Shown one piece after another: positions 31,449 to 52,904 of a DNA stretch of 64,000 nucleotides (positions are counted from its first letter, which is position 1; the number at the start of each line of letters is the position of its first letter). Below the pieces are notes generated by a model, which made no database searches, was not told the origin of the DNA, and saw nothing but the letters and a program-made list of their open reading frames with translations. Location of the stretch: positions 1 through 64,000 of the forward strand of contig NW_019218625.1 of assembly GCF_002571385.2 (NCBI RefSeq), read 5' to 3'. The position numbers were made by a program, and so were the translations under genes. This stretch comes from Stylophora pistillata. Its lineage: Eukaryota.

Positions 31449-34400
31449 CTATGAGTTATCTTCCATAGTTTTCTTTATCCAATCAGTAAATGGATACATC
31501 CTAGTATAGTATCCATACTGATCCTTTTGTGCGCAGCCCACTCCCCAGCTGACCAGCCCAGTAGCCACCCAACGGAAGTCTTCTCCTCTTTCTGCCTCAC
31601 GTACGAAAGCTCCTCCACTGTCACCATGGCAAGTATCATTTCCTCCCTTCCCATCCCCGGCACAAAACATCACTGTAGAGTTGAAAAAGTATTTCCCTGA
31701 TTTGTTAGCGCAGAGTTCGTCGCTTTGAATTGTGAAGGCTGAGTACTGAAGACGGGCTGAGTAGCGTTTTTCTTCTTTGGGTATTTCTCCAAGTTTCAAG
31801 GCTTGCGTTACACCCCAACCTGTTGCTATGCCGAATTTTTTAGGGATTGCCAAATCGCCGTCATCCTTTTCTGGAATACACAGTGTCCGTACAAAGGGGC
31901 CAAGTTCCACTTCCTTGTCGAGTTTGACCAAAGCAATGTCACTTGCGAATTTTTTATCGATGTAATCTTGATGAACAAAAATCTTCTTCACCTCCACATC
32001 CATCTGAGATTTTTCAACCCTCACCAAGTGGTGGTCACCCGCTATCACTTGGTACCTGCGAGATGAAGAGTAGTTGTTTTAACGAAAATAGTTTGGCTAA
32101 ACGTTTGGTTCACCAACCAAGGAAAAGCTGGTTTTGGTCATTTTCCGAGAGGTATTCGCCATGTGAATGATATCAGAAATTCGAATGCCTTTTTACCACA
32201 GAATTTTCTCACCTTATAAATGTGAACTTTAAAATCCAATAAAAAATGATATCTAAAACCATAGATGTTAAAAGTTACTTTAGACTTCAAACGTAAAAAG
32301 GATTGATGGACTCGGTGCTTACTTATTGGACAAATCGTCGAAAACACTAGCCCCATGAAAATTTTTGTGGTAAAAACAATGTGCAGCCGTAAGAACCCAA
32401 CGACGAGAAATCAGAGCACCGCCGCAGATAAGCACAAGTTTCCCTGAAAAGGAGAAAGTAAACAGATATAAAAACAATAATTAGTAATTTTCGCTAATAA
32501 TTACTTATCAAAAAAAAAAAAAAGAAAACCGCCAAAAGAGAATTGAGCCCAAAAAACAATCACGCTTGTTGTGTGGGGTTTATATGCAGAACAATGGAGT
32601 CATTCTATTAGTGGGAACAAAGTAACGTTGATACCACGGAGATCAAGAGTTCCCAATTCCAAAGATAAATCTTGGTTCTAGAGTATTTTTGAGTAGTTTT
32701 CCGAAATGCCCATATGTAGATGTAGGCCGCAGACTGCCGTGTATGGGGTAGAATAATATGCCCAAATCATTCAAAGCAGCATATGGAAATATGATGGAAA
32801 TAAAATGTTATTCGCGCTTTTCTTGTATGTACAGCATTCAATGAATGGGCTAACCGAAGCAAATCTCCAAATCAAATTACCGTCTGAGTTGAGCCTGCGT
32901 AGTCCAATCTGCCAGGGCCACCAGCCTCTTTTCGAATTCTTGCCACCGACCATTCTCGCCCTCAGGTCAACCGGACTTACACCACAGGGTTTATAATCTG
33001 TGAACAAGAAACAAACATAAAGTCATAATCACTTCAAAGTAGACCGGTTTACTGCAATGCGCTTATATTCTTTCTTTTCTTGTCCTATCTTTTCTGTATT
33101 TTTAGATAATACTTTGTGGAATAAGATGGTCGATCTCAGCTTTCAATTAACACTTCACTCTTCTACACCCTTGAACCGAAACCATTTTGAATCAAGAGCC
33201 CCGATTCATAATTGACTGCAAAATACAGAGGAATCACAAGCGACGGAATTTAAGCTGATATTATCAATTTACGACATACCGATCTTGATGTAAGTCGCTC
33301 TCTTGATGGCTTTCTGAAGATGATTGTAGTCTCTGACATGGAGCACATGATTATCGGCTGCTTCAGGTGAGGCTATATCCATCAGTTCACGAGCGCGAAC
33401 TTTCTTTCCAACTCCTACAGGGTAAGATGTTGAGTGATAGTGGGCAAAACGAAAACTAGTGATAAAAACTAGTGATGAAAACTAATGGTAATAATAGCGG
33501 AAAAACCAAGTTAATACATCGGTGTCATTTAAAGATAGCGCTCCTCGCATTGCTAAGAGTTGAATTCCCCTTTAGCCCAACCTCAGAAATGAGGGCTGCT
33601 TACAAAAATGATAATCGGAACTGGAGGTAGAGACCGTAACACTGTGAAATTACGTCGACTATATATCTGAAGGTAAATAACCCTACAGAAATAATATATA
33701 GAAGTGTAAACTGTACTCTTCCAGGGTGCTTGGGTCCAATTATGGGGAACGAGCGCTTGTGTGAATGTCAGAAAAAAGAGTAAAATGTCTTCCCAAGAGC
33801 GTCCTTTAATAAGTTTCTTAAACTTAACTTTCTAGAAATCTTCAAGTGCCCCTGTTTCAAATTACTGCCAAGTTACTTTACCTATTGCGTAGATCTCAAA
33901 GTTTTCCTGTTCACGAAGATGCTTCGCTAACTTTTTAGGCGGACCCCCAATGTTAGACATTCCATCGGTGATGAACATCAACACACGGTGTCTGTCGGGA
34001 CGAGCTTGTGGCACAACGACATCTTTGACCTCTTGTAAAGCAAGTGCTGAGGCCGTAGCTCCCCCAATGTAGATTATATCATCAATGGCTTTGATTGCTT
34101 TATCCATGGTGTCGACCTTTGCGTCTCCTAAGTTAAATTCAACTTTCACGTCCGTCCCAAAAGTCACGGCTGCTACTCGTGTTCCATCAGCTCTACGAGG
34201 AGGTTACAAAAACTGAGGATAAATTTCTTGATGTTATAGCTAGTGATGATATTGCTCACAATGAGCATCTATTAAATAGTTAATTTGGTTAGGCAGGGGA
34301 TGTTAAAGAACCCACTCAAGAGAATACTGTGATGTGGTCTGGCCTGTTTGCTGGAATTAGGGGGGGGGAGGGGGGGTAGGGGGCATCTTCAAATATGTTT

Positions 34401-37400
34401 CCTTCGATTATTGTAAACTGCTGATGCAGTCCGGCCAAAGTCCCCCGAAAAGTGTTGGGATGCGCATTTGATCATATCCACATGTTAAATTGCGCAATAT
34501 AAATCTTAAATTATTATTATTATGATATGAGCACTCTTAGGATAGTTAGAACCGTCATAAGCTATTTTTAGCTAGTAACAATGACAAAACTTGACAACGG
34601 TTTCCTCGAATTTGCGGTCATTAAAATTTCAAGTAGTCTCACATTGTAGCATTTATTTCGCATCTTATTCTGTAGAAATTGTGGAAACTATCTCCTCTGG
34701 CTTCTCTCTCCATGAGGTCTTGTGCTCTCAACTTTCAAACTTACGACGTGGACATTTTCAATGCGGTTACACCAAGCAAAGGAGAATGGAGAAATGACCT
34801 GTCTCGTGCATTAATGGTCATTGAGAAGAAGAAACAAAGTTACGAGATTTATTCTTCTGATTTACCTATAAGGGGTACATTCCACAACCGTTCTTAAGAC
34901 GCGAGCCATTTGCTTGCGTTTTGGACGTTATAACACAAGAAATTAAGTTTGAAGTGGTTTGTAAACTACTCCATCCGTGTGTTCAGCTCCTTAATTAGCG
35001 ATATACTTATTCTTCAAATTATTAACAGGTTGAACAAGTAGAAAAGAACTCTGTCCCTAAAAATTAATCGTACCTTTTGCTGGCGCCAATGGTTCTAACC
35101 AGCTCTTTTGCAAATTCCAAACCAAACTTGAAATCAGTCAGCTTTCTCACACTGCTTGATGCATCGATGACGAACACAAGATCTAAGCCACCCCTTGAGT
35201 TCAAATTAATGGCTCTGCCTCTGAAATCCATGACACGAATACTTGTCCTGTTGCATCCAGTGCTGTTATCGCTGTTACACGTGTACTCTGATAAAGGATC
35301 AAGCAGATTTTTGCGAAGATTGTAGGCAGTGACGTTAACACCCTTAAACCGATCTTCGAATTCATCTGTAGAAACAAATTGATGGAAAGAACTCTGAGAA
35401 AACTGCAGTTCATCAGAGCTAACAGCACATGCTACTTAGAAATGATTTCGTTTGTCGTATACTAAGGCTGCAGGTAAAAGAATGCGACTTTTGTGCGACC
35501 TGCACTTATCATTACCCCGACAAATTGCGTCCGTGCCATTCCAAGCTCCGCTATCCAAGCATTTTCTTACTGCGGACCCCTTAAGAAGAAACCCGCGTTT
35601 ACATTCGAATGATACAATGTCTCCCTTGTTGTATCCGCTGCCGTATTTACGTCCGCTTATTGGAGTACCTAGAACGGGACAGTCGGTATCTGAAAGAGAA
35701 TTACAAAAAAAAAGTTTTTTTAGTCGAGGATTCACTTTTGATAAATCACTGACTGATTGACCGACGTACTGACTGACAGACTGACTGAACTGAGCGGAAA
35801 GTCAGTATCTGAAAGAAATATAAAGGGCAAAGGCTCTTCAGTTGACTGACTAACTAACCTACAGGCTGACTAATTGACTGATTGATTGACTGACTGACTG
35901 ACTGATGAAGTACGCAGTTACTGACTGACCAACTGGCTTACTGACTGACTAACTCACTTCCACCCACAGACTGACTCACAGACTGACTGACTAACTGAAT
36001 GGAATAGGATAGTCATTACTTACAAGAGATGTAAGGAGAAAGGCTCCTTCGTGGAAATTGCCCTTTTGCTTTACCCCATAAGGAACACTACTGATTGACT
36101 GGTTGACTGATTGGGTGAGTGACTGACTGACTGACTGACTCTTTCACTGGTTGACTGACTGACTGACCAATGGATGTCCCGGCCGGACCAATACTCATGG
36201 TCTTAAAATAAGTGGGGAGAATTTGCTACCTTTCTATGGTAGAAATGGATAGATATACTAGTCTTCTAGGATAAGGACGAATAAACCGTAGGCCCCGTCT
36301 CCTGCAGGGTTAGGGATAGGAGACGTTAATTTCCCACGCACGAGATTACTGGGGGGTGGATGTCCTCCCGTGGGTGGGATGGGTGAGTGTTGTCCCTGAA
36401 AAGCCCTTATGGGGAGTGGTCAGTTAACCTATGTATGTATGTATGTATGTATGTATGTATGTATGTATGTATGTATGTATGTACTGACTGAAGGACTGAC
36501 TGACTAAAAGACTGGCTGACTCAAGCATTGACTGACTCAAATACTGGCCACCTTATTATAACACTGACTGACTAACTAAATGACTAACTGACTGACTAAC
36601 TGACTTACTACTAAACTGACAATCTAATCAAAGAGATTTTTTATCTCACTCTGTCCTTACTTGAATTGTGCTGGGCTATTTATGCCTGATTGGCATAAAC
36701 AGCCAGCTTTATCTATATAAAGCCGGGATAATACGAGAAGTAAAAAAGAAATAAAGAGCGAATAACCATTGCCACTCTCTACTGCATTTCAGAGAAGCTT
36801 AAGAAAATTCTGACTTACTTCCATCTTGACATGTGGCCAAAGTTCCATTCCATTCCTTATTCTCCTGGCAAGTCCTTTCCCTTGAGCCAGACAATTGGAA
36901 ACCAGACTGGCAGGAAAACTGCACTGTACTACCAATTCTAAAATATCGATCTTGATAGTAACGATCACCATTCTCTGGTCTCCCAGGATCTGGACAAGAT
37001 TTTACTACAAAGCAGTATCGTTTATGGTTACGAAAATAATAACAATAATCATTTCTTTAAAACTTGATAACATCACGAAATGTTATCAGTGGGATATTCA
37101 TGTGGATATTTATTTTCCAAAGCCTGTTGTCGTATCTGATTGGAATTGAAAGACTTAGCATTTTTGGAATGATGAACAACTGTGCAAAGATCATCCTTGG
37201 TGATGATTGGTAGCTAGGTTTTTGAGGACATTGAACAACGCCAAACAGAGTACCGGTATACATGTAACTCTAGGGTTCAGTTTCTCAAAAGTCCCAATAA
37301 CTTAACGGGCGTTTCAAAATTTAAAGGATAGGAAAGCAGGTTCTGGCACCCAAAAAATTCCTTTTTGTTTCTTCGGCAGATAGTTTTATTGTATCATTTT

Positions 37401-40400
37401 CACAACTTTTGAGATCCCCATCTTGAATGAAAACAGAACAGCTTTATGGGCCGAATAAGTTAACAGGACTTTCAAGAAACGGGCCCCAAGATTGAAAGTC
37501 AACCCAGACCACAGCACTGAGGGTAAACCCTTGAACTGATAAGCCATTCCTGTCTCTTTCTCCCACATAATTAATTAAATCATTATTTTATTCCTTAAAA
37601 CATGCTTACTAGCGCAATATGGTGATCTTCTGGGGCTCCAACCAAATTTGAGGCAAGTCATCGTGTCACTGCCTCGTAGCTCATACCCTTCGTTACACTC
37701 AAATGCAAGGGTAGCTCCATACAGGTATTCAGGGTCAGAGGTGGTGACATTTCCATTTCGAATGACAAGTCTTCGTGGCTTTACACAACGGATTTCTGTA
37801 AACAAAAATGAAATACTATTTAGCGATGTGGAGAGATTTCCATAAATGTGTAACACTAATTCTAAAACAGTCCTTGTCCCAAAGCAAATAAACTGTTTCG
37901 CCATTATTTTTATAAAGAATTGTATGCATACTGAAGTACGGGGTTATATGGAGATCTTTCCAGTTACATTCCCATTCTACACAATTTGAAAGCAGGACCT
38001 CCATTAATAATTTTGCGGTTAAAACGATCTTTTGTGCTAGCGCATCTCTTTCAGTTTACTTACGTGTACAAGTCGGACCACTTGACCATTTCCCATTATG
38101 AAGACACGTTCTCCTTTCCGGTCCATGAAGTCGATAACCTTTTGAACAAGTGTATTTTAAAGTATCCTCGTAGTTATAACTTAAGCCGCTCACGTTAGCA
38201 TTAGGAATGTCCTCGGGTTTTCCACATGATCCTAACGGAGAGAACACAAATATATATTTTTAACCCCATAACAGGCGAAGAGGAAGAACCAAAGATGAAT
38301 GCCGGGTTACTCTGGAGCACACTTACGCCATCTCTCGCATTAACTGCGACAACACAAATGAATGGGCGTGAAAGAGGATTAACGTAGCGGCCATTTTGAA
38401 GCTATGTCCATCCATTATGGCCGCTCCTGATCGCTACAAACAACTAGCAAGAGAAGAGGAGCATTTGCTGACAAGGTGAAGTAATTGTCGCTAAATTGGA
38501 AATTTTAGTCCGATTGTAAGGTACTCTCCTTGCCTATTCAATTTTGGTATCTTTATATCGGTTATTCCAATCACAATTAGTTTTAAAATTGTGAGTGTTG
38601 ACTCTGTTGTCTTCCAACGCATATTTTCAGCCTGATATCTTCTAAGAGCTCTTATCTTTCAAGGACTAATCGGTGCGTGTGGCGTTTTATTGTCGTCTCT
38701 ATTGGAAAGATTCTTGTATAGCCCAAACAAGGGATTTGAACTCTACTAACTATGAATAAATACAGGAAAAGTTATGGATGTATATTCATTTCCTTTGTAT
38801 TTAATTTGCAATTATAGCCAATTCAGTATCGAAAGAAGCTTGTTAATGTTGTTGCATTTTCACTCAGACAATAACTTTAGGCGAACAAAATAAAAGCATT
38901 ATTGTCGATTTGGATTGGAGCAATTAGAGTGCTTTTCGATTGAGTGCTGTGAAATCCTAGTCAGGTTAGATGTCACCAGGAGCCAATGAGAACTCGAACT
39001 GAAGTAAAAACAAGCAAACTGCCTGAAGCGTGGGAAACGCAAGTGACCAAAATCGTTAATAGTTTTGGTTTTGAATCTCATTGGTTGAGAAAGTGGTAAG
39101 AGTTCTCCGGAATAATCAGCTGACGATAACAGCAAAACCAAAGCAACCCCGGATAACTTTCGCAACTAAAATTATTGTTGTTTGTGCACTTGTATTAAGA
39201 TTATCGGATTTAGTCATGAATTTAACTCACTTGGTGAACATTTAGGAGCCTGGGACCACTGTCCGTCTTTTCCGCATTTCCTTCTTTTTGGTCCTTCGAG
39301 TACATAGCCATGATCACATCTGTACTTTATTTTATGGTTGGCGCTGAAACGGGAACCAGAGAATGTGGCGTGTGGAATGTCATCGGGTTTGCCGCAATAT
39401 ACTGATAAAAAGAATGTGAGGAAATATATATGAGATTAAATATGCTAACAGTTTTTTACGTTTTAAATCATAAACTAAAACTTAATCATGGATTAGTGAA
39501 GTGCGTTCGATCTAGCTTTGGAATGGACATTTTTGAACCTTTGTAACAAAGTCCAATTTATGATTCAACTTATGAAGTTCAAATGTTGGCGTGGCTTACA
39601 GTTTTAATTTATAATTAGAGTTTTAATTACAGTTTTAATTTATAATTAATCGTACTCCTGATACTCTAAAATCCATGGTAGTTTATCAATTTTCTTGTGC
39701 GGGATGTAATTTCCGTTGTATTGACGAAACTAGTCGCCACCTCTCTACTNTTTGTCGGCTATTATTCTAAAATAGCGAACCTCAAACTCCGACAACTCAC
39801 TAAGCGCTTTTGTAAATCGGACCTAAATATCAAACTAGTTTTCACTTCTTTCAAAATTAAAAACATGTTCAGTGTTAAAGATCGTACTCCTGATGCTCTA
39901 AAATCCATGGTAGTTTATCAATTTTCTTGTGCGGGATGTAATTCCCGTTATATTGGCGAAACTAGTCGCCACTTCTCTACTAGGATAAAGGAGCACACGG
40001 AAAGCGATAAAAACTCGCATATTTTTAAGCATTTTAACACATCTCCTTCTTGTAAGAACAAATACTCCCTTTCTTGCTTTAGTATTCTGGATTCTGCCAA
40101 CAACTCAATTGATTTAAAACTCAAAGAAGCTTTTTATATAAATAAGATCAAACCTGAACTCAACAAACAATTACAGCATTATAACACTTTTCTAGCATTT
40201 TAGTTCACACCTTTAATTTCATGTTTGTTGTCACGCTGTAATTAGTACCCGCTTTTGTATTACATCATACTGTAAATATTTTATTCATCTACTTGTCTGT
40301 TATATAATTACTCACGTTCAGTTACTCATTGATTGAAGGTGGCATAAGCATGCCGAAACATGTCTCTAAAAAAAGTTGTTTATTTCTTACAATATATATT

Positions 40401-42616
40401 ATAATTAATCATTTAGTTGGATTAGTTCGATCAAATGGCTCTAATTTATCCAAACCGAAGCGAGTCAACCCGCGGGACTTCACCTGAACACTTGGGTGTT
40501 TTGCTTGCGATCCACTTTCCATTCTTGCAAGTTCTTATGTCAGTTCCTTTTCGGCAAACGTATCTTGCCTTACAATAACCAGTGTGTATAGCCACTCTGG
40601 ATTTTGGAGGCGGATTTTTTTGGGCTTCACGGAGAATATCAATGCATTTCTTGTCACATTCTAACACAAGAAGAAACAATGTAACTTGAAAGCAAGCATA
40701 TGCCCAGTAAGGTAACATCTTTTATGTAGACAGTTAGATATACTTGACTTGGATTTACTCGCGTAGGTGAGATATGTTATAGGTTTCACCGACCCTAAAT
40801 ATTCAATCTTATCTTTGGGATTTCAAGTTAATTAAACTCATCTTCTGCAAGTGTTCATGAACCGAAATTAGAACTCGCTTCTGTTTACAACCCAGGGTAA
40901 AATCTTACGAAAGGCCAAATAAAGTCTCCCGCCGGTTTGATGTCAGCTGATGCATAAATACGCCCGTTTCTCCTACATAAAATTTCTTTTTAAAAGGAAT
41001 GATTGCAGTTTTGTTAGTAAGCCTCTGTTCGCTATTAGTTTGACGTTAGGACCTACTTATATTAAGCTTTTTACTATAAAATAAAACTATACAGAGATTC
41101 CCAAAAGAGACTGGGACAATAGAAAACAACTTCATTAACTGATGGTTTGTTAACTCTGAATTCAAGGGGTAAACGCTTGAACTTCCGTAAAACTTACTAC
41201 TTTTTCGGCTCATTACATTTTGAGTGGCCAACACCAGTGCAGTCAAAAACACGTACCATAGAATCTAGGAAATAAGAGAAAAGTTCAGTTTCTTTCCAGT
41301 CAATATTTCTAAGCTAAACAAGTGCTTAAAACTCAAGTGCGCGGTAAATTTAGTCATTTTCTCCTCTTTTAGCAGATTAGTTGATATCCAGAGGATCCTC
41401 GCAAATTTGAGGCCAATTTTGTGGCTAGCTCTGTCGAAGGGCTAACGCTTCAAACGTCAGTTTTGGAAAACTTTTTAACGGCGGCCATTTACGTTATCAA
41501 CTCAGTTAATAATACCATAATTGTATTTATTTAATAGTTGTATTTATCGTGTTTGCGATATTTTTGGAACATATTCCTGATTGATTGAATGGTGTTCTAT
41601 GGGAACTCCTTTAATCAAAGATAACTTCATTTAATTTTGAATTGTATGCAGAATGAAAGTTATCCTTTTAACTTAAGTGGGTGTTTGTTTTGAATGATAA
41701 CTTCTCCTTAAAAGATCAGTGCATAATTCAGCGCACGAGTGATGAGAACTGATGAAAAGAGAATTAGCTCTACTCTTTCAGTGTGTTTCTTTGATTAAAG
41801 CCAAAATTCTTCAAACCAGCTTTTAGAGGAAGTGTATAGGAACTCTGTGGGAGAATCAATCTAAATTAACTCGACTATCTTGGTGATAATTATTACATTG
41901 TGAACAGCCTCCATGGTAAAGAATTTTATATGACTGACACCCTCGTATACCTTTCCAACGCCTTTATAGGGTACATACATTTAATAGACTCAAGCCTAAG
42001 CTTTTAAACATGCAGGTATAGGAGTATTTCAAGGAATAATTTTTGTCGCCTTTACTTTCCTTGCTGAAGGAAGAATCTTCCTTTTTAGCTTAGAGAAGGT
42101 TAAAGGTTAGCCAATGTTTTTCACAATACATAGAAACTCTTTGCTTTAACTAATAGCAAAATTTCTGATCGTATAATTAGATACTAAAACTTTTATTTTT
42201 GTCCAGTTTCGATTAAATTGGCATCATCGGAATATGATGAGAGTATTGACTTTTATTGATTAACACTGCTTGCTCTTTGCTGACGTTAAACGTCCCCCAT
42301 CATGAAGATGATTAGTCGGATTAGTAATAACGTTACGTCCTTTTGTTGTTCTGTGCAGTGGCACTAGTCGTTCCATATCACTGAATCTTAATTTATGATA
42401 GTATAATGATAGTTGCGAGGCTTCTTCGCATACTTTTTAATTATCAGGGCTTTTAGAGTAAAAATCTCCTTTAACCCGATGATCGAAACACCCCGTCAAG
42501 ATTAATTAATATTGGTTGATCCAGCACGTATATTTTTCCCTTTTAGTCCTTTCAGCTTTACTTGCGTTGCAGTGTAGAGTAAATTAACATCTTACCTGAT
42601 ATCGAAAAAATAGCAT
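31449..42616 (-). CDS. CFB: Complement factor B/C2-like protease (~910 aa): signal peptide, 6 CCP (the first divergent), vWA with MIDAS, trypsin domain with intact triad
   Basis: 14 exons: 42616-42596, 41264-41198, 40660-40484, 39401-39231, 38231-38064, 37795-37610, 37004-36819, 35689-35516, 35365-35074 (FRGRAINL...LDLVFVIDASSSV), 34192-33882 (GGAT...FITDG), 33414-33280, 32997-32881 (LRARMVGG), 32443-32323 (TAAHC), 32055-31449 (SDIAL, DTCHGDSGG). 2733 nt, open frame. The symbol denotes family, not proven orthology. Confidence 0.9.
35748..36620. repeat. Degenerate (GACT)n microsatellite field interrupted by a SINE
   Basis: Many GACT/ACTG tetramers; (TATG)n at ~36430-36482. Confidence 0.85.
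36178..36482 (+). mobile_element. 5'-truncated tRNA-derived SINE with a (TATG)n tail
   Basis: Body (cccggccggaccaa...ggtcttaaaataa...cccgtctcctgca...ggagacgttaattt) is shared with 50307-50530. Confidence 0.7.
39650..40385 (+). mobile_element. Penelope-like retroelement fragment (GIY-YIG) in a factor B-like intron
   Basis: VVYQFSCAGCNSRYIGETSRHFSTRIKEH...LKLKEAFYINKIKPELNKQ; degenerate hammerhead-like tgaaggtggcataagcatgccgaaac at ~40335-40359; 39650-39749 repeats 39882-39981. Confidence 0.85.
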
Positions 42617-43495
42617 CTTGCTCTGTTTGGAGATTTAACTCTAGATAATGCTCAGAGCTTAGTGCATTCGAAGATATCTCTTTTCTGTTTCCGCTATTCG
42701 CTAGCGTGTCGAGATTGTTAATTCTTTCAGGATATTTTTACCGTCTGAGCGCTGCCTAAACACAAATGAACGGTTGCCAAAGAAAACAGTGTGCGCGCTC
42801 ATTCAGAGCTTGCTGTCAATTTAAGCAGCTACAGTTTCAGCGGATGTTGAGGTCGTATATTGAGAAGTTTCAGGAAAAGGTCTGGGAAGTTATTTTCTTC
42901 CTGTGACAAAAAACATATTTTCTTCGCTTTATTGCGCCATCATTTCCGTCACTTTCGATGAAAACTGTTACATCTGCCATAGTTTCCTACTTGGTTAAGA
43001 CGGTAAACTCTTTATGATAAATGAAATAAAGAAACATTGGAAATATACACAGTTGAGTGTAAAATTTAATATGACGGTTGGCCGACTTAACTGGTCTGAT
43101 TGGTAACACCACATTGCTCAATTCTGATAAAAAGATAAACAGCAGGGGTTGGATGACCTCCAAATACACAGACCTTTTGATGAAATGAAAATGACAGCGC
43201 AGTTTCAGCTATAGTGATTTGGCTCACGTAGGGAAAATTCTGCACTAAAATAACACTTTGATGACAGATTTGTTCTCGTTTCCTGCCCTTGGTATCCTGA
43301 GAATAACAGCGCTCAAAATGAAGGAATCAAAAGATAACGTTACCGTTGACAGCTTGTCCGAATTAGTGTGCTGAAAGGAAAAATAATTTGGCACGTTCTT
43401 GCGTGTTTCTCATTTAATTCCTTTGCGTCTAAAACGCAGAAGCAATACCTTCAAAATACATTTCGTTTTCGTAAACACAGCGTACGGTGAAAACC
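42617..43495. promoter_or_regulatory. Probable bidirectional promoter/5'UTR region between head-to-head genes
   Basis: Only ~880 bp separate the divergent ATGs at 42616(-) and 43496(+). Confidence 0.55.
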
Positions 43496-46400
43496 ATGCG
43501 TTGCGTTGTAAGCTTTATTTTCGGTCTCTTTCTGCTCCAGCTGGCAAGAGGCGAAGAGAATAAATCAGGTAAGTCATTGTGTGCTGGGCGGTAAAACTGA
43601 TTATCTCTATTTCAAGTTTAATAAGTTTAGCAACGGGTATTTGTCATGCAACCATTGTAGATGAATAAAAGAGAAAAAAAAAGGGTGCAGAGACAAAAGA
43701 TGACGGCCATTGAGATTTCGGTTTGAAATTTTGATTACGTTGTGGTATTTACTTAATTCTATGTATCAGTGAACTAAGTGTTGAACGTAACCGGACCTGT
43801 TAAAAATGTTCCTGCGAGATAAGTTTACCTTCCTTTTTTTTCTACGAAAATCCTTGTGTTCGAGCAACTTAGATACCGTGTTGTGTGGGGTGCCGCAAAC
43901 TGAGGCAACCCTTTTAGTCGTGGGGTGAGGAAAAATATGCTTTCCCCAGGGGAGAGCTCTCCAATAACAAAATAGCCCAAGCAGTGGTATGTTAGATTTG
44001 TTCCAATTTCAGCGGGGTGCTTAGGGTAGCAAGGATAGCACAGGAAGTGAATCGGATCATGTAACGCAATAGCCGCTTGCTCGCTCGCTCCCGCGTTCGC
44101 GCGTGGTTATCGCGATCGTACATGACCAACGAGTAATTAGTTACACAGACACGCCGTTTGCGATTATAATATTGATTATTTAAATGTCCTGTCACCTTGA
44201 GCCGAGTCATTCTCTTGACAACAGCAATTATATTGTTTAATTGGTATTCGACGGTACAAATACTCTACTTACTCCTTATTTTGGGCTCAATAAAGAATTG
44301 CACAGCTCAAGATGATGATCTTTTTTTTTTTTTTTGATTATAGTCAAGAAATGCCTTGCCCTAGAAGCTCCGGAAAATGCTGAAGCAATTGGCAATAACA
44401 CAGTTGGTTCTGTTGTCAAATTCTTGTGGAAAAAGGGCTTTTTTCGACTTGGAAGTCCTCACAGAATCAGGTGTAAGTCAAATGGACAATGGACTAAGCC
44501 TAATGTGTCTTGTGTTGGTGAGTACTGATAAAATGTTACTTTCATATATCATGGCTACGACTGTCCTTATGACTTTTTTGTAGCGTGTGTACAATACCAT
44601 CAATCCGTGAATCTTTCCCTTTCTTGTAGTTGCTTGTTTTCTTTTCGTGGTTTCTGTTCGGTAAAGTTGTTTTATTTTGCTGATTTTGTCGCATTATTTC
44701 CCCTAAATGATATACAGTCGTTACCCATGTTTCACTTAGTAATGTTGACGATCCTTTTTTTTGCTCACATTTTGTTTATTTTAATTTAGTCATCGGATCG
44801 TTTTCCTTTTCAGCTGTAAGTTGTGGAGACCCTGGCTCTCCCTTGAATGGAAAACGCATGGGTTGGATATTTCAGTACAATCACAGTGTCACTTTCGATT
44901 GCCATCGCGGTTTTAAACTGGAGGGACCTAAAACAAGAACCTGCCTTGAGAACCAAACCTGGAGTGCCAGCCAGCCAGTTTGCAAACGTAAGATTAGAAC
45001 ATGAAGCAAGATTTTCCCATGTGTTTTAAAAATATAGCTTACAGTTAAAACAAATGATCATGCTCCCGTAGCAATGAAGTCTCTTGCGTAACGAACAGAA
45101 TAAACGATTCCACCCATGATGGTAAAATGGATGATGCAACAAAGAGAGAACCGAGTCCCATTATGTCCTCATAATGAAACAAAACCCAACTTAAATAAAC
45201 GAACCCCCGTTACGCCGAATTAGTTTCCCGCCCTTTAGCACTTCTTCATACGTACCTGGGTGTGCTTATTTTCGGGTTATTGTGGAATCCCCACAAAACG
45301 AATCCCTGACCATAGAGCGTAACCATCTAACCCGATAAAATGAATCCTTTTTTTCGTCCTCGACAACATAGTAGAAGTAAAATAAATGGAATAGTATTGC
45401 GTGAAAACGATCCAACGTTATGACAGAGACCTTTTTTGATCGAAATATTTTAGCTGTTCCATGTGAGGAGCCTCCAAAAGTGGTTGATGCGGTGATGTTA
45501 AGCGGTGGTTTCGTGTTTGGTGCACCCGTGTATTACACTTGTAGTGAAGGGTATAAATTGCAAGGACCAGACACGTTGGCATGTGGAGAAGATGGAAAAT
45601 GGGTCGGTGAGACTCCGGTTTGTAAAGGTGAGTTTCTTGGTTGACTTTCGTTTCATACTTTTATTTTCACTCTACGTAGACGAAGCACGAAGTAAAATGA
45701 AATGGCCAGCTGCTTTCAAAATATTCCGCTCACAAAAAAAATTAACTTTGACAACAATAATCAAACATCAAAAGTGAGACATATTTGTGTCGAACAATAA
45801 ATTCTCGACTTACCGTAACTCAGCGCATGAAATAACCAACCCCAACAAACAACAGCAACAAATGCCCACAGGGAGTGGCGGTGTAGCCGAATGGTTAGGG
45901 CACTAGACTCGTTGTTCCGGGCTCAAGCACTACACCCTGCTACTTACTGGATTTGTTCTCATTTGCCCCAAGTGCAACTACCTGGCTGCACCTTGTAGAG
46001 AACCAACTGGTCTCTCCTCTGCCATTTAGGAGTTTTCAACACTGGGTTTATTTGCAATGTTTGTTTCCATATTTTTTTCTTGGGAAGAGAAGAGTGATTA
46101 GGTAGCAGTCGATTAAGGCCATTGCTTATTATTATTAATTTTGTCGCTATCATTATTGCCATTACTATCATTATCATTAGTAAGTGTTATTACAATGAGA
46201 TTTACCTCCTTTTGCATTCCCCTTTTAGCCATAACGTGTGCTGATCCGGGTACACCCCAACACGGTTCAAGAAATACAACCGGCCCTCCATTCAGTCATA
46301 TGTCGTTAATCTTCTACGAATGCAGTAATGGATACATTTTGTATGGAACTGACAGGCGCTCTTGTAATGGTGACGGGGAGTGGACTGGGGTACAACCGTT

Positions 46401-49400
46401 TTGTGTTGGTAAATAAGTAAAGAGCTCTGCGCCTTCGATTAATGTTAAAGTGCACCTAAACCCAAAAAATTTTTTTCGCTTAACGAAATAAGCGTATTTT
46501 TTGGAGTATTTCTGTACAAAAAATATTTTATTTGCCCAGATCTTCAATTTTCTGTGCCCAGTCAACATGATACGAAAAAATCGGCCGCCATCTTGCTCCA
46601 CGACCGAGTTTAGAGAGGAATGGCTCTAGCGGGTAATGTGTCGTCAAATCGAGAACGCGAAAGTCTGCATTTCACACATTTTCACTTGTATGGGAAGGTT
46701 GTAGTCGATATTTTCCGAAAATATGCCGACTAAGTGTGTTGCAGGAGGATGTAGCAAAGTGCGAAATTTGGAAGAGGGTATCGCGCTTCATACATTCCTC
46801 ATACAACACACCTAGTCGGCATATTTCGGACAATATCGACGACAACCTTCCCAAACAAGTGAAAATGTGTGAAATGCAGACTTTCATGATCTCGATTTGA
46901 CGTCACATTACCCGCTAGAACCATTCTTCTTTAAACTCGGTCGTGAGCCAAGATGGCGGCCGATTTTCCGTATTTTGACTGGGCACACAAAATTAAAGAT
47001 TTGAGCAAATAAAAACATTTTTGCAAATAAATGCTCCAAAAAATAAGTTTATTTCGCTAAGCGAAAAAAAAATTTGGGGTTTCGGTGCACTTAAATGATA
47101 ACTGGATGAAACAACATTTTTTTCGCTTTTTTTATACCTAATGGTGACAATCAGTTTCTTCCCCTACAATCATTGCGCTGTTTTAGTGCTTCTTTCGCTT
47201 TCCCTTCCTCACCGCTAACGACTATTCTCCATTTTATCCTGTTTTCACTCCTCTTCAATCCACTGTCCTTCAATCTTCTTTCCATTTTCTCTCACTTACT
47301 TTTTTCAAGCTGCCTCTCTCTTAACTTCTCAGCTTCAACTTATTAAAGCTGATTGTCATCAGCACGTTGTTGAGAGGAAAAGGCGAATTTAAATACTCGA
47401 GTGTGTTATTTTTCATTCATATATTTTTTATTCTATAGAATGCGCAGGTGTTAACACGCCGGTTTTCGTCAGGAATGGGCAACGTTTCATCCACGGAATA
47501 ATTCAGCAAAAAAGCAAAAATATCGTGACGGTTCTGACTGACTCACCTAAAGAAGAAAGAGATGTTGTGATATTTGGACCTGGAACACAGCATTACATCA
47601 TAGTGGAGGACAAACTCCCATCCTCGAAGAACGTCTTCTTGGGATCGCGTGTGATTGCAATGCAAAGAGGATCGTACATCTTTGCTAAGGTTGACGCGAT
47701 CAATGGTGACAAGTATTCGGTAACATTTGAGGACAGACAGCGAACTAAGCGGACAGTGGCATTAGAGCATATCCGCAACTTGTTTCCTCCAACATTCTGT
47801 GGTACGTAAGTCATGGTGCCTTTAATTAAGCTAAGAAGTGTACTGAAGGGTTGAGGAAATCTTTAGTAGCTACCTTAAACAAAATCTGTCTGGATCATAC
47901 GGTCAATCTGCTCAGCTCAACCTTCCCTACTATCTTATGGAAATGGCCACTACTTTCTTGTGTATCCTAACGGTAAAAAGCCTTACATAGCCTCACCCAA
48001 ATAAGGACATGCTCCTTCTGGTTTGACCGCATCTTAAGAAGAAACTTTCCTATGGCTGTTACGTACCCCTATCAAACAGCACACCGCCTTGATATATTGA
48101 CGTGAGCCACAAATGGAGCCTTTAAGACTTTGGATTAGCCCAACTAACAGTCGCCGTTCTATAAATAGAGCCAAGCTTCTTGGAAATTAACTTTTGGAAG
48201 CACGATTATCAAAGTCTAGGTTTAAATCTATAGATTTTAGAAATCTTGGAAAAAAATAAAAATTTGCACCCAATCTAAGACAGTTTTCTGACATTACACT
48301 GTTAATTTAAACCAATTAAGCAACATGTCCAGACCCTGGAAAACCAGACAAAGGCTTTCGAACAGACAACTTAGAGGAGTTCATAGTAAGGACCGAAGTA
48401 GAATTTGGTTGTGAAATAAATACCCAGCTGCTTGGATCAAGTAAGAGAACATGTCAACCAAATGGAAGATGGTCTGGAGAACAACCGACCTGCGAAAGTA
48501 AGTGTAAAATGATATTTATCAAAATGCATATTATTGAGAGAAAGAAACGAAAACCGCCCTGCAGGTGTCAGTGTTAAGTAAGAGGGATTCGCGTGAGGAA
48601 AAAAAATTCAAAGTACAGACAAACTTTCACCAAAAACTCGACGTCTTAGCGTCATTATGACACAGCTATATCGAGAATGAGGATTAGTCAAAGACAGAGC
48701 TGTGAAGACTTAATAGAGTTGGTAGTTAATAAGAGTCGGAAATATTTTATCTTGATTAATAAATGATCATCGCCTTTCCACCGCCTCGATTCGCCTCTGC
48801 TATTAGCTGTTAATTTGAGAGTCTTTTGTATTTATTTATTTAGTTATTTACTGGCTATGGTTTCTGTGAGCATCTAAAGATCAGACCTTATGAACGTAAG
48901 GTACCGAACAAAGACCCTGGCACAAATGGAGTCAGTTTGCACGCTTAGACACGGGCCTAACCTGTAACGATGCCTTTTTATTTCAGTTAGTCTGAATTTA
49001 AACGTGCATATCAAGATGTAATTTTTAGATGCATGAATAAAAAAAAAAAAAATGTTGCATCTATTTGCCAATAGTTACTTCTTGCTGGGATCTCGATGTC
49101 TTTCCTCCCAAAAACGGCAAACGAATTGGTGATGACTTTTCTATTGGAAGCACCGTAGCCTTTTCCTGTGATGAGGGATATGAGCTTGACGGAGAATCGA
49201 AGCTGACATGTCGTCCGGATGGTCAGTGGTCTGACAGAACGCCTTTGTGTAAAGGTATGACAAAGCAGAACCCCTTCTTTGCTTCAGCCCGTGTTAAAAA
49301 TCAATAACTTTTTTTTACTTTCAATTTCCAACCAGATTCTCAATGGATCGATGTCCGCCAGTTCTTTTACTATCAGCTATTTGAATTTTCTATTCTTTCT

Positions 49401-52400
49401 TTTTGTTTGTTTGTTTGTTTGAGGAGGGAGGAGGGGTAGCCATCGCAATTCTCGGTGATCACTGCAACGTCAACGGGTGACCTCTATATGCTTTTCACGA
49501 CTATGTCCATTATCAACCCCCCCCCTCCCCCCCGCCTTCTTGCATTATTTGGGAATTTGATTAAGGGGGCACGCGTTTGCCTTGGTGTCTAACAAGCTTC
49601 TTTTTCTCTTCCCCCGCCACTTTGACACTTACCTTAAAATGTTCCTGTTTTAATCATTGTTATAGAATATATGTGCAATTTGCCACAAGATTGTGTGTGA
49701 ACGATTACCTAGATATGGAAATTGCAAATTTTACAGATCGCTGCGAGGGCGTGGTTTGTAAACTTGAAGAGAAGTGTGTTTATAACAGCCTCCAAGGGCC
49801 CAGATGCGTCTGCCGTAATAACGTGGACTGTCCTGCCGATTTACAACCCATATGTGGTTCTGATGCGAAAACCTATAACAATTACTGCATTATGAAGGCG
49901 ACTGCTTGTCGAGAAGGCAAGGAGGTGGAGAAGGTCGCAGATAACTCATGTTCTCCTGGTATGTCTTCTTTCGTCTTGCTTCTTCTTTTTTTTTTTTTGA
50001 GGTTTCTTAATGCGTAGGCGACTATCATTCCCTAAAGCTGATGCTGGCTGAATAAAAAAACCCATAACTAATGCGCTTTTCTTTCTTAAGTTGTTTGTTT
50101 GTTTGTTTGTTTGTTTAAAGAAAAAAACATGTAACCTATGCACTAAGGTACTTGTACGTTACATGATCCTTTAGAATGGTTGTGGCAAAAAACAGTGATA
50201 ATAGATAACGGGGCAATCATCATGTTAATTTGGAATGTTGTGGGTAGTTTATTTCTGAAACTCCAGTCATTGTAACAGGTCAAAAACTAATGACAGATTA
50301 TTAACCGCCTCCCGGTTAGCATAATGGATAGAGCGCTGGACTGTTGTGCGGGAGGTCGAGGGTTCGAGCCCCGGCCGGACCAACACTCAGGGTCTTAAAA
50401 TAATTTAGAAGAATTTGCTGCCTTTCTATAACATCAAGAAATGGTTAGATATTCTAGTTTTCTCGGATAGGGACGAATAAATGGAGGTCCCGTCTCCTGC
50501 AAGGTTGGAGTAGGAGACGTTAATTTACAGGGCCATGTATTAGAAAACTGGTTACTGGGTTAATCATGTATTTACCCTCTTAAAATAAAGAACATTGTAT
50601 TGTATTGTATTGTATTGTATTGTATTGTATTAATCTGACGTGTTAACTCTACTTCTAAAATCAGGAGGAATTTGTCAGATAAACCCTGCAAGCAAATGCA
50701 GGGCTTACTTCAGAAATTTCTATTTCAACGTGACAAGCAATGTGTGTGAGCCAATCATTGCAGGTGGTTGTCACCCAAGTGGATGGAATGGTTTCCCTAC
50801 CATGGAAGACTGCAACCGTACTTGTTCTGGTAGGTGGAGTCTACAACATAACTAATTAAAGATTTTCGATCTTTGGGTTCAGGGACCGTTATTATTTATG
50901 GCCGGGAGGGGAAAGTGGGGCTGCTGGAGGATATTGGTTGTGTAACGATAAAATTTACTCGATCCACCTAAGGTTCTGTAACTTCCTTATGATCATCTCC
51001 CCCACCTCTTTCTTTGGAGTTAATTGGCAGTCGACTTTCTATAGTCCACCCATTACGCTCTGTTGACGACGACTGATCCCCGGCCCCTCCGTCCCTCCTG
51101 TAAACCATGTGATCCCCAAAATCTTCCACCAACCCCTCCCTCTCCCCACAGGGGATAAAGAATGCCTGGTCCTTAATTGCTTTTTGAGTTGTCATTGTTC
51201 GACTCGAGAAAAGAGCACTAAAAAATTGCTGAATGGTTTTTCAGTACAATTGTACTGCAAATGAATCGCTCTAAGTTACTATTTGATTTATTCAATGCTT
51301 TCAGTGGACGTATGTAGCCAGCCTACTGAACCAGGTCCGTGTACTAACACCACACATCGGTGGGCATTTAGCCCCAAAGCTGGTCGTTGTAAACGATTCA
51401 ACTATGGAGGCTGTTTTGGCAACGAAAATAACTTTGACAGCAAGGACAAATGCAATAAACGTTGTCCTCCTGTAAATACTGGTAAGGTGTTCCTCCCATT
51501 TGGTATTTTTGTCCCTCGTGATATTTGGACTGCTTCTCTCTTTTCCTTAGTGTGGTTTGTCGAAGTCAAGCAATGTAGTAGAATTTCCTGAGCCGAGCAC
51601 GAGCGAAATAGAAGGCCGTGATAGGCTGCGTAGTAATTAATCTTCTGCGCAAACGGGAAAAGCATGGTGGTGAGAAGAGTGTATTGAACAGGAGTCACGC
51701 GTACTTGTGATTTCAAATCGAACTCGAGCTGTGCGCTCGTTCAATTTTGAAATCATGTGTATGATTTCAGACCAAATTGCACTCCGCTCAGCGCAACCTA
51801 ACTATCATTGAGGTAAAACAGGCACTTGAGAAACCTTGCAGTATTTATTTTTTATTTTTTTTTTAATTACTGAGCATGATGAAATAATGCTGGTTTTTCT
51901 TAGATCGAGGGAACAAAGCCTGTCCAAGATGCGTTCAAAAGAGACTTCGTGAGGCATGCAAATCCAGTAGTATTGGTGAGTTGGCTTGTTGTCGACGAAC
52001 GCTTTCCATAGAATTAAATATTGATAAAAGTAAACTAAAAATTATAGCAATGATGATGATAATAATAAAACGAAAACCCCTTTGTCTCTGTATTTGGTCG
52101 CTGTAAAGGTCCCAAGCAGCCAGTTTCATTTTCACAAAAGCTCGCCGAAACCCTTTACGGTGGAGCTCCTTAACCCATAACAGCAAAACATGTTAAACAG
52201 AATCCCGGTCGCTAGACTGATAAAGTGCTCTCACTCATGATCATTTATTTTTTCTGTCTGGGCTGCGCTGCGAAACGTGCATTGGTCAACACCATCGAAC
52301 AAACTTACCTAGTTACCACTCTCTTAAATATTGATGTTTGTAGCAAGGTGTTTGGTAGGAATAAGATGACTGGAAGGATTAAGTTCGCTAAATTTCGGTG

Positions 52401-52904
52401 AGGAACCCATGTATAGTACGTTTATTACCCAGAGATTGCGACCACAACAAGAATAGATACTGATGGTCTTAGGGTCGACCATGTGCTGAAATTTTGCCTC
52501 GCGTGTTGTTTCCTTTCTCTTGTGTCTAAACTTTTTCTAAACAATTGTCTTTATTCGCAGCATTTGTAGGCAAAGTCGATAAGAAGTTGCCACATGATTC
52601 AGTCAAGAAACAAGCTCGTTATCAGGTCGTGATAAAGAACGTTCTCAGGAATACAGAGGGCTTTCCTACATTGGGAAGTGTTGTCGTCAATGTCCCTTAC
52701 AGTAGGTCACCAGACTGCCCCTGCCCTTCGCTACCCCAAGAAACGTTCTTTCTGATGGGAAATGTCGTGGTTGAACCAAAAGGCAACAATGCAAAAGTTG
52801 GCATAACAGTCACAAAGCCTGCAGTTGTGCAAAAATGGAGCCAAGAGATCCTTCAGAAAATGAATAAAAAATGCAAAGATTTGGATTATCGTGAACTACT
52901 CTAA
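43496..52904 (+). CDS. Gene W: secreted mosaic protein (~824 aa), signal peptide, 4 CCP, tandem-Tudor-like module, 2 CCP, follistatin/Kazal, 2 Kunitz, NTR (WFIKKN-like C-terminal half)
   Basis: 13 exons, all introns phase 1: 43496-43568, 44344-44517, 44814-44987, 45454-45627, 46229-46408, 47439-47801, 48321-48497, 49075-49254, 49737-49958 (10-Cys follistatin, PICGSDAKTYNNYC), 50665-50829 (Kunitz), 51305-51481 (Kunitz, FNYGGCFGNENNF), 51904-51975, 52561-52904 (NTR, CPRC...AC...AFVGKV...CPCP...W). 2475 nt, open frame. Confidence 0.88.
45872..46115 (+). mobile_element. Degenerate tRNA-derived SINE
   Basis: Head ggcggtgtagccgaatggttagggcactagactc is A-box-like and followed by a non-tRNA body. 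Confidence 0.5.
46449..47091. mobile_element. Kolobok-type fold-back MITE carrying the start of a THAP domain
   Basis: Preceded by TTAA; ~290-bp inverted arms (agtgcacctaaaccc... / ...ggggtttcggtgcact). The centre from 46723 reads MPTKCVAGGCSKVRNLEEGIALHTF. Confidence 0.75.
50307..50530 (+). mobile_element. tRNA-derived SINE followed by (ATTGT)n
   Basis: A box tagcataatgg and B box ggttcgagccc, then the same body as 36178-36330. Confidence 0.75.

What the first reader, a model, noticed from the sequence alone, without database searches (positions are those of the whole stretch)
43496..52904. Unusual architecture: CCP array fused to a WFIKKN-like FS-Kunitz-Kunitz-NTR tail; possible C3-mimicking regulator of factor B
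Seen: signal peptide-CCP4-module-CCP2-follistatin-KU-KU-NTR with all introns in phase 1. Known: WFIKKN proteins are WAP-FS-Ig-KU-KU-NTR; CCP arrays typify complement regulators; the C-terminal C345C domain of C3b is an NTR-family domain whose terminus contacts the factor B MIDAS. Inference: the C-terminal NTR could dock on the neighbouring protein's vWA and present the Kunitz domains to its protease, i.e. a C3-independent partner or decoy. I do not recognise this domain combination from described proteins.
Basis: partly seen in the sequence, partly recalled or inferred. Interest (0 to 1): 0.8.

Follow-up and report, generated by a model that had tools for sequence, protein, structure and literature searches.

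The report
Coral CCP-Kunitz-NTR protein beside factor B
This is a real, expressed coral gene for a secreted protein that joins complement-type CCP modules, an unexpected tandem-Tudor-like module and a Kazal-Kunitz-Kunitz-NTR tail, and it sits head-to-head with a complement factor B gene in every coral and sea-anemone genome I could check, which makes it a testable candidate regulator of early animal complement.

Summary
Window 43496-52904 (+) holds one 13-exon gene of 824 codons. Its order is signal peptide, 4 CCP, a Cys-bracketed module, 2 CCP, FS/Kazal, 2 Kunitz and NTR. Each domain has its own exon and every intron is in phase 1. RNA from four studies splices the last CCP exon directly to the FS exon and onward to the NTR, so it is not two genes.

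The unnamed module folds as a tandem Tudor (pLDDT 88).

The family is single-copy here. It occurs in stony corals and a sea anemone, carries only automatic names, and no paper on it was found. In all five genomes checked it lies head-to-head with a factor B gene, 840-930 bp apart, with folliculin downstream.

Kunitz-1 has an invariant P1 Arg. Kunitz-2 has a hypervariable P1 and usually a glycosylation sequon in its loop. The NTR is the least conserved exon and its C-terminal tail is long and variable.

My best reading is a secreted Arg-specific serine-protease inhibitor co-regulated with factor B, a candidate complement regulator. The scan also noted this cluster on the same window.

The parts
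42588..43495 (.). Head-to-head intergenic region shared with the factor B-like gene (putative bidirectional promoter)
   Evidence: Blocks 42588-42646, 42765-42933, 43112-43162 and 43341-43557 align to the same interval in Oculina and Desmophyllum. The gap is 840-930 bp in L001-L004.
43496..43568 (+). Exon 1: start codon and signal peptide (MRCVVSFIFGLFLLQLARG...), donor GTAAGT, phase 1
   Evidence: Sequence read directly. The hydrophobic core LFLLQLAR is shared with the Oculina orthologue.
44344..44517 (+). Exon 2: CCP1. In this assembly the second Cys is replaced by Trp (44427-44429).
   Evidence: Pfam Sushi 25.7 bits; splice sites; orthologues have Cys at this position.
44814..44987 (+). Exon 3: CCP2, the best conserved N-terminal CCP
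   Evidence: Pfam Sushi 42.8 bits; 62.5% identical to Actinia.
45454..45627 (+). Exon 4: CCP3
   Evidence: Pfam Sushi 47.6 bits; splice sites.
46229..46408 (+). Exon 5: CCP4
   Evidence: Pfam Sushi 33.8 bits. Its 3' end is the loose end joined in front of 47438/47439 in RNA contigs X1 and X3.
47439..47801 (+). Exon 6: Cys-bracketed tandem-Tudor/Agenet-like module (121 codons)
   Evidence: AF2 mean pLDDT 88.4, two five-stranded barrels. Foldseek top hits are the BAHCC1, SETDB1 and FMRP/FXR tandem Tudor domains, E from 8e-5, prob 1.0. Only 18 relatives among 1.84 billion representatives.
48321..48497 (+). Exon 7: CCP5
   Evidence: Translation; RNA joints 47801>48321 and 48497>49075 in 4 runs.
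49075..49254 (+). Exon 8: CCP6
   Evidence: Pfam Sushi 48 bits; RNA joint to exon 9 in 4 runs.
49737..49958 (+). Exon 9: follistatin-type module (EGF-like part plus Kazal)
   Evidence: Pfam Kazal_1 35.8 bits; Kazal_CFAI 27.3 bits, just under its 27.7 cut-off. Best PDB matches are agrin and follistatin FS modules.
50665..50829 (+). Exon 10: Kunitz 1, six Cys, P1 Arg - P1' Ala, divergent loop spacing (C-7-C ... C-13-C)
   Evidence: Pfam Kunitz 32.8 bits. Cys-Arg is the same in all 9 sequences that have this domain. 62-85% identity across orthologues.
51305..51481 (+). Exon 11: Kunitz 2, canonical spacing, P1 Thr followed by an NTT sequon
   Evidence: Pfam Kunitz 66.8 bits. P1 takes 8 different residues in 10 sequences, and an N-x-S/T sequon sits in the loop in 8 of 10.
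51904..51975 (+). Exon 12: start of the NTR domain (three Cys: CPRC...C)
   Evidence: RNA joints 51481>51904 and 51975>52561 in X1, X3 and X23; translation.
52561..52904 (+). Exon 13: rest of the NTR domain, C-terminal tail KDLDYRELL, stop codon. The 3' UTR runs beyond 53100.
   Evidence: Pfam NTR 27.6 bits; RNA depth continues to 53100.
31452..42646 (-). Neighbouring factor B-like gene (CCP x3, vWA with DxSxS and TDG MIDAS motifs, trypsin domain with Asp at the S1 position)
   Evidence: Pfam on its exons; ORF translations; first-exon homology to orthologous gene models.

Best explanation
Window 43496-52904 is one single-copy, expressed coral gene. It encodes an 824-residue secreted mosaic protein: signal peptide, four contiguous CCPs, a tandem-Tudor-like double barrel, two CCPs, one follistatin/Kazal module, two Kunitz domains and a C-terminal NTR. 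It belongs to an undescribed family found in stony corals and a sea anemone. In every genome checked it is divergently paired with a factor B gene across about 0.9 kb. I infer that it is a secreted inhibitor of an Arg-specific trypsin-like serine protease, acting through Kunitz-1. I further infer that it is made together with factor B from a shared bidirectional promoter. The CCP array, and perhaps the NTR, would then bring it to complement-type complexes, where it would restrain factor B and/or MASP. That would make it a candidate complement regulator of cnidarians. Shown: the gene structure, splicing, domain identities, fold of the module, conservation pattern and synteny. Inferred: the target protease, the co-regulation and the role of the CCPs and NTR.
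For: One transcript: GT..AG joints link exons 6 through 13 in RNA contigs of three studies and in stranded raw reads of a fourth, and the end of exon 5 is joined in front of exon 6. A transcript-derived ORF, P0034, is 97-100% identical to exons 6-13. Full-length orthologues of 718-846 aa have the same architecture. Synteny: factor B (Sushi-VWA-Trypsin) lies on the opposite strand 840-930 bp upstream in Actinia, Porites, Oculina and Desmophyllum as well as here. Single copy: the module and NTR match nowhere else in the 398-Mb genome. A second factor B paralogue on another contig has no such partner. Inhibitor features: Kunitz-1 has six Cys, an invariant P1 Arg and 62-85% identity across orthologues. 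The neighbour's protease exon reads NDTCHGDSGG, i.e. Asp at the S1 specificity position, so it should prefer Arg/Lys (read directly). The four N-terminal CCPs have 3-4-residue linkers, like the four-CCP functional unit of RCA proteins (PMC4868954 abstract).
Against: There is no direct evidence of binding, inhibition or co-expression. Folliculin, which has no link to complement, is also conserved next to the gene. Adjacency alone may therefore reflect slow genome rearrangement. CCP, Kunitz, Kazal and NTR modules are all widely used outside complement. Vertebrate Bb is not known to be controlled by Kunitz inhibitors (my own knowledge). Kunitz-2 and the Kazal reactive sites are not conserved. CCP1 in this assembly lacks one Cys.
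Confidence: 0.4

Rival explanations
1. The C-terminal NTR mimics the C345C domain of C3b. Its C-terminus coordinates the Mg2+ of the factor B vWA MIDAS and presents the Kunitz domains to the factor B protease, acting as a C3-independent partner or decoy.
For: The NTR is real and C-terminal. The neighbour's vWA keeps DxSxS and TDG MIDAS motifs. The pair is conserved. A weak structural search puts C5, C4b and C3b C345C domains (TMq 0.54-0.61) above the PCOLCE NTR (0.45). Most tails carry an Asp 4-6 residues from the end.
Against: The NTR is the least conserved exon, at 27% identity to the anemone and 48-50% among corals. The tail after the last Cys is 8-11 residues, with a variable sequence and end residue (I, L, E, S). 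In C3 it is about two residues (my own knowledge). The NTR model has pLDDT 64.5 and no Foldseek match below E 0.07. C3 structures are also over-represented in the PDB, so the ranking means little.
Confidence: 0.08
2. A WFIKKN/GASP-like extracellular trap for TGF-beta-family ligands, which binds through the FS and NTR domains. The CCPs anchor it to matrix or cell surface, and the link to factor B is incidental.
For: The tail order FS-Kunitz-Kunitz-NTR is that of WFIKKN without the Ig domain. The FS module is highly conserved, with an invariant CGSD..YN..CIMKATACR motif, and resembles follistatin and agrin FS modules.
Against: No WAP and no Ig domain. A word-based search with the Kunitz-Kunitz-NTR part found only the family itself and no WFIKKN, though sensitivity was limited. 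The WFIKKN1 Kunitz-2 structure is not the best Kunitz match in the PDB.
Confidence: 0.15
3. A general secreted protease inhibitor or matrix protein of mucus, mesoglea or skeleton-forming tissue. It would act, for example, against microbial or digestive proteases, and its position next to factor B is passive synteny.
For: Multi-Kunitz/Kazal mosaics are common in invertebrate secretions. The hypervariable P1 of Kunitz-2 and of the Kazal site fits either diversifying selection against foreign proteases or loss of constraint. Folliculin adjacency is conserved too.
Against: The gap to factor B keeps the same divergent orientation and nearly the same length (840-930 bp) across the anemone-coral split. 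This points to a constrained shared promoter. The gene is single-copy and not expanded, unlike typical arms-race inhibitor families.
Confidence: 0.3

Closest known systems
WFIKKN1/2 (GASP-2/GASP-1)
   Same: Secreted mosaic protein whose C-terminal half runs FS/Kazal, Kunitz, Kunitz, NTR, with only one of the two Kunitz domains likely to inhibit.
   Different: No WAP and no Ig domain. Six CCPs and a tandem-Tudor-like module take their place. Here Kunitz-1, not Kunitz-2, has the basic P1. No detectable sequence affinity beyond shared domain families.
Regulators of complement activation (factor H, DAF, MCP, CR1, C4BP)
   Same: An N-terminal run of four contiguous CCPs with short linkers, and a genomic link to a complement gene. 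Database pipelines name members 'C4b-binding protein alpha chain-like'.
   Different: RCA proteins are built almost entirely of CCPs and have no protease-inhibitor or NTR domains. No C3b binding or motif signature was tested here.
C345C (NTR) domain of C3/C4/C5
   Same: C-terminal NTR-family domain with six Cys. In C3b this domain is the factor B docking site.
   Different: Much longer and variable C-terminal tail, low conservation, and subfamily placement unresolved.
Multi-Kunitz plasma and tissue inhibitors (TFPI, bikunin, HAI-1, boophilin, SmCI)
   Same: Closest solved Kunitz sequences. P1 Arg canonical loop in Kunitz-1.
   Different: None of them combines Kunitz domains with CCPs, a tandem Tudor module or an NTR.
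Tandem Tudor / Agenet readers (BAHCC1, SETDB1, FMRP/FXR, 53BP1)
   Same: The predicted fold of exon 6 is two packed SH3-like barrels.
   Different: Those are nuclear or cytoplasmic readers of methylated lysine. This module is Cys-bracketed, encoded by a phase 1-1 exon inside a secreted CCP array, and only 10-23% identical to them. An aromatic cage was not examined.

Membership tests
WFIKKN | N-terminal WAP domain | tested here: not met
   No WAP hit in any exon or in the full-length orthologue P0004.
WFIKKN | Ig domain between FS and Kunitz-1 | tested here: not met
   The FS exon is spliced directly to the Kunitz-1 exon. No Ig hit.
WFIKKN | FS/Kazal, two Kunitz domains and a C-terminal NTR in that order | tested here: met
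   Pfam exon by exon and on P0004.
WFIKKN | Sequence relatedness of the tail to WFIKKN proteins | tested here: inconclusive
   The region search with Kunitz-Kunitz-NTR returned only the family itself, but that search needs shared 5-residue words.
WFIKKN | Binding of GDF8/GDF11-type ligands | not testable with these tools
   Needs a biochemical assay.
Regulators of complement activation (RCA) | At least three or four contiguous CCPs with short linkers | tested here: met
   CCP1-4 lie in consecutive exons with 3-4 residues between the last and first Cys.
Regulators of complement activation (RCA) | Built essentially of CCPs only | tested here: not met
   Five other modules are present.
Regulators of complement activation (RCA) | Ordered RCA motif signature (Ojha et al. 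2019, PMC6683126) | not tested
Regulators of complement activation (RCA) | C3b/C4b binding with decay-accelerating or cofactor activity | not testable with these tools
   Needs a biochemical assay.
Canonical Kunitz serine-protease inhibitor | Six conserved Cys | tested here: met
   Both Kunitz exons.
Canonical Kunitz serine-protease inhibitor | Conserved, accessible P1 residue after the second Cys | tested here: met
   Met for Kunitz-1, with Arg in all 9 sequences that have the domain. Kunitz-2 fails: 8 different P1 residues in 10 sequences and a loop sequon in 8 of 10.
Canonical Kunitz serine-protease inhibitor | Measured inhibition of a protease | not testable with these tools
   Needs an enzyme assay.
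NTR / C345C | Match to the NTR profile above the curated cut-off | tested here: met
   27.6 bits against a 21.9 cut-off for exon 13 alone.
NTR / C345C | Six-Cys pattern | tested here: met
   Three Cys in exon 12; C-P-C and the last Cys in exon 13.
NTR / C345C | C3-like short C-terminus right after the last Cys, which is used for MIDAS contact | tested here: not met
   Tail of 8-11 variable residues. The C3 reference is from my own knowledge.
NTR / C345C | Placement within the C345C subfamily | tested here: inconclusive
   Model pLDDT 64.5; best Foldseek E 0.075. phmmer against the PDB found nothing.
Tandem Tudor / Agenet | Two-barrel fold | tested here: met
   pLDDT 88.4; Foldseek prob 1.0 to several tandem Tudor structures.
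Tandem Tudor / Agenet | Profile match above the curated cut-off | tested here: not met
   Agenet 19 bits against a 27 cut-off. The precomputed PF16090 hits are weak or faint.
Tandem Tudor / Agenet | Aromatic cage for methyl-lysine or methyl-arginine | not tested
   Invariant residues are listed, but the cage geometry was not examined.

The most novel reading that the evidence does not exclude
Factor B and this protein form an ancient protease-regulator gene pair, more than 500 million years old (date from my own knowledge). Both are transcribed from one bidirectional promoter. The regulator would unite three functions in one chain: an RCA-like CCP head, a Kunitz active-site inhibitor and an NTR that imitates the C3b docking domain. 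It would then be the first complement regulator identified in a non-bilaterian, of a design unknown in vertebrates, and it would carry the first extracellular tandem Tudor domain.
Probability: 0.15. Interest if true: 0.85.

Novelty: new variant of a known kind. Interest (0 to 1): 0.62.

Why it matters
Cnidarians have C3, factor B and MASP, but no regulator of their complement system has been characterised; only in-silico motif hits have been reported (PMC6683126). A single-copy secreted protein that combines complement-type CCPs with a conserved Arg-directed Kunitz domain and an NTR is a concrete candidate. It is also locked head-to-head to factor B from anemone to stony corals. Standard assays can test it: binding, protease inhibition, C3 deposition and co-expression. 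Complement is also implicated in coral-algal symbiosis and in immune challenge (PMC4840205, abstract), so a regulator would be relevant there too. Separately, a tandem Tudor fold inside a secreted protein is unexpected and widens the known contexts of that fold.

Tried and rejected
1. Two separate genes: rejected by the splice joints and the transcript ORF.

2. NTR first exon in the open frame 52216-52398, my own first guess from sequence: rejected. RNA uses 51904-51975.

3. phmmer of the NTR exon against the PDB found nothing useful.

4. AF2 of exon 13 alone gave a poor model (pLDDT 64.5). Foldseek matches were all weak, so the NTR subfamily could not be called.

5. The search for WFIKKN relatives with the tail region recovered only the family.

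6. BLASTP between the exon 6 module and the Cys-bracketed module of the discoidin genes in the same window found no alignment. The profile-profile comparison gave probability 19%, E 0.0012, which is inconclusive.

7. P0060 was checked as a possible factor B protein. It is a different CCP-protease.

8. Synteny look-ups for the Acropora and Montipora proteins found those products not on record.

9. Complex prediction was not sent. The factor B vWA and protease domains are split over several exons, and no unspliced or database sequence of them was in hand. The largest protease exon lacks the His57 part, so a run would have been uninformative.

10. ARAGORN and Rfam on the highly expressed intron repeat gave no hit.

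11. Literature searches for this domain combination in corals or cnidarians found no description.

12. Full-length work used database proteins (P0034, P0031 and others), and the window was searched exon by exon.
Full report
**What is there.** The window is eukaryotic, about 38-40% G+C. The runs that hold it are labelled as one coded organism and 'coral metagenome'. The closest named orthologues are from the stony corals Oculina patagonica and Desmophyllum pertusum.

Between 43496 and 52904 on the + strand there are 13 exons:
- E1 43496-43568
- E2 44344-44517
- E3 44814-44987
- E4 45454-45627
- E5 46229-46408
- E6 47439-47801
- E7 48321-48497
- E8 49075-49254
- E9 49737-49958
- E10 50665-50829
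- E11 51305-51481
- E12 51904-51975
- E13 52561-52904, including the stop codon

E1 is 73 nt and every internal exon is a multiple of three. All twelve introns are therefore in phase 1, and the reading frame totals 824 codons.

The window was searched exon by exon by reference. Full-length comparisons used database proteins.

**Domains.** Pfam, run exon by exon, gives Sushi for E2-E5 and E8. It gives Kazal_1/Kazal_2 for E9, with Kazal_CFAI just under its cut-off. It gives Kunitz for E10 and E11, NTR for E13, and a sub-threshold Agenet hit for E6.
- E7 is a further canonical CCP. The ORF listing missed it because it has no in-frame start codon.
- E12 encodes the first three Cys of the NTR, as CPRC...C.
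- E1 encodes a typical signal peptide.
- There is no hydrophobic C-terminus, so I read the product as secreted and soluble.

**One gene, and expressed.** I laid RNA of four studies on 47300-53100: three sets of assembled contigs and one set of stranded raw reads. They show GT..AG joints E6>E7, E7>E8, E8>E9, E9>E10 and E10>E11 in all four runs. Joints E11>E12 and E12>E13 appear in three of them, and the X2 contig retains intron 11.
- One contig carries the end of E5 plus E6-E9. Others carry E8-E11.
- In two runs the letters joined in front of 47438/47439 are the 3' end of E5.
- All raw-read joints have the first mate on the minus strand, as expected for a + strand RNA in a standard stranded library.
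- P0034, a transcript-derived ORF in the protein collection (537 aa, 177 member sequences), is 97-100% identical to E6-E13.

The refuting condition 'two separate genes' therefore fails. They rest on splice consensus, on colinearity with full-length orthologues, and on a 1456-nt contig that continues upstream of E6.

**The module.** E6 has only 18 relatives among 1.84 billion representative proteins. Nearly all are exon-sized fragments from coral-like assemblies.

With a 17-sequence alignment, AlphaFold2 gives a confident model (pLDDT 88.4) of two five-stranded barrels. Foldseek matches tandem Tudor/Agenet domains (BAHCC1, SETDB1, FMRP/FXR, SGF29, plant AGDP) with probability 1.0, E from 8e-5 and 10-23% identity.

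It is bracketed by Cys residues, and an invariant GTQHY..V.D..P loop lies between the barrels. A tandem Tudor fold inside a secreted CCP array is unusual. Its ligand is unknown.

**The family.** A search with the full-length relative P0004 found same-architecture proteins of 637-846 aa. They come from Montipora, Acropora (two species), Porites, Oculina, Desmophyllum and the anemone Actinia tenebrosa, plus transcript assemblies.
- Their names are automatic only: 'zona pellucida sperm-binding protein 3 receptor-like', 'C4b-binding protein alpha chain-like', 'CUB and sushi domain-containing protein 3-like'.
- The number of CCPs varies: 3 or 4 before the module, 1 or 2 after it.
- One transcript lacks Kunitz-1.
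- The one-domain-per-exon structure is conserved in four other genomes.
- In this genome the gene is single-copy.
- Five literature searches found no description of the architecture. A paper on NTR-protein evolution (PMC3516229) does not mention it.

**The link to factor B.** The minus-strand neighbour has three Sushi exons, VWA exons and Trypsin exons.
- The VWA exons carry DxSxS and TDG motifs.
- The Trypsin exons carry Asp102, Ser195 and an Asp at the S1 position.
- Its tiny first coding exon lies near 42600, by homology to the Oculina and Desmophyllum gene models, about 880 bp from our ATG.

The same divergent pair is present in Actinia, Porites, Oculina and Desmophyllum, with gaps of about 930, 840, 845 and 848 bp. 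Folliculin follows downstream, as it does here at 54217.

A second factor B paralogue on another contig has no such partner.

The constant orientation and gap length across the anemone-coral split argue for a constrained shared promoter. The equally conserved folliculin neighbour warns that adjacency alone could be passive.

**What the conservation pattern says.** Identity of the window's exons to the Actinia exons:

| Exon | Domain | Identity to Actinia |
|---|---|---|
| E3 | CCP2 | 62.5% |
| E8 | CCP6 | 59% |
| E10 | Kunitz-1 | 62% |
| E11 | Kunitz-2 | 62% |
| E9 | FS | 54% |
| E6 | module | 44% |
| E13 | NTR | 27% |

- Kunitz-1 keeps Cys-Arg-(Ala/Gly) at P2-P1-P1' in every sequence that has the domain. 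It also keeps an unusual, strongly conserved AGGCHPSGWNGF segment.
- Kunitz-2 has eight different P1 residues in ten sequences and an N-x-S/T sequon inside the loop in eight of ten. I take it as non-inhibitory or fast-evolving.
- The Kazal P1 position also varies.
- The NTR tail after the last Cys is 8-11 residues, with variable sequence and end residue, although most corals keep an Asp 4-6 residues from the end.

**Mechanism.** The best-supported reading is a secreted, Arg-directed serine-protease inhibitor acting through Kunitz-1 and co-regulated with factor B. The four-CCP head and the NTR would act as targeting modules, making it a candidate regulator of the factor B/MASP cascade. I give this about 0.4.

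| Reading | Odds | Main points |
|---|---|---|
| Kunitz-1 inhibitor co-regulated with factor B | about 0.4 | invariant P1 Arg; conserved head-to-head pair |
| General secreted inhibitor, passive synteny | about 0.3 | folliculin adjacency is conserved too |
| WFIKKN-like ligand trap | about 0.15 | same tail order; no WAP or Ig; no sequence affinity found |

The NTR model was too poor to help with the last reading. No complex prediction was sent, because no unspliced factor B domain sequence was available.

**Verdict.** It is a new variant of known kinds (mosaic Kunitz/Kazal inhibitors and CCP proteins), of above-average interest.

Noticed in passing
window 50210-50597 (intron 9): A repeat with enormous RNA depth, over 60,000 in the contig sets and 160-280 on both strands in raw reads. 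It has many loose ends, some tRNA-like. ARAGORN and Rfam find nothing. Probably a dispersed, highly transcribed repeat (SINE-like).
   Followed up: partly
window 51121-51701: A non-canonical joint (TC..GC) replaces 579 bases, including the whole Kunitz-2 exon, with 13 other letters. It is seen in one contig of X1 and in 24 raw reads of X23, but the shorter side is only 21 letters. It may be a structural allele, another copy of a repeat, or an artefact. Extra depth and read starts near 51733-51900 suggest another transcribed element in intron 11.
   Followed up: no
window 44427-44429: In this assembly CCP1 has Trp where every orthologue has the second CCP cysteine, a one-base difference from a Cys codon. 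That leaves the fourth Cys unpaired.
   Followed up: no
window 2836-3426 (+) and 25888-26481 (-): There are two further copies of the last factor B protease exon. One is intact, 85% identical, and sits at the contig edge next to an N gap. The other is 63% identical with three stop codons, i.e. a pseudogene.
   Followed up: partly
window 7696-8085, 14218-14574, 23035-23442, 28902-29105 (+): A different Cys-bracketed module of about 115 aa is repeated in neighbouring genes that carry a discoidin exon. BLASTP finds no similarity to the exon 6 module. hhalign gives probability 19%, E 0.0012, and aligns the opening Cys and the PVxF.R.G motif. Common origin is possible but unproven.
   Followed up: partly
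window 54217-54459 (+): The first exon of a folliculin gene ([21 protein letters not shown]...). Folliculin is the conserved downstream neighbour in Actinia, Porites and Desmophyllum too.
   Followed up: partly
window 32774-33007 (-): The factor B-like protease domain begins ...DLRAR/MVGGKNS. This looks like a classical Arg-(I/M)VGG zymogen activation site, unlike vertebrate factor B. It has Asp at the S1 position (NDTCHGDSGG in 31452-32048).
   Followed up: no
window 27822-28241 (-) and 39697-40203 (+): ORFs with GIY-YIG-like motifs (YVGSTS...RFRNH, YIGETS...RIKEH), suggesting Penelope-like retroelement remnants. The second lies inside a factor B intron. Judged by eye only.
   Followed up: no
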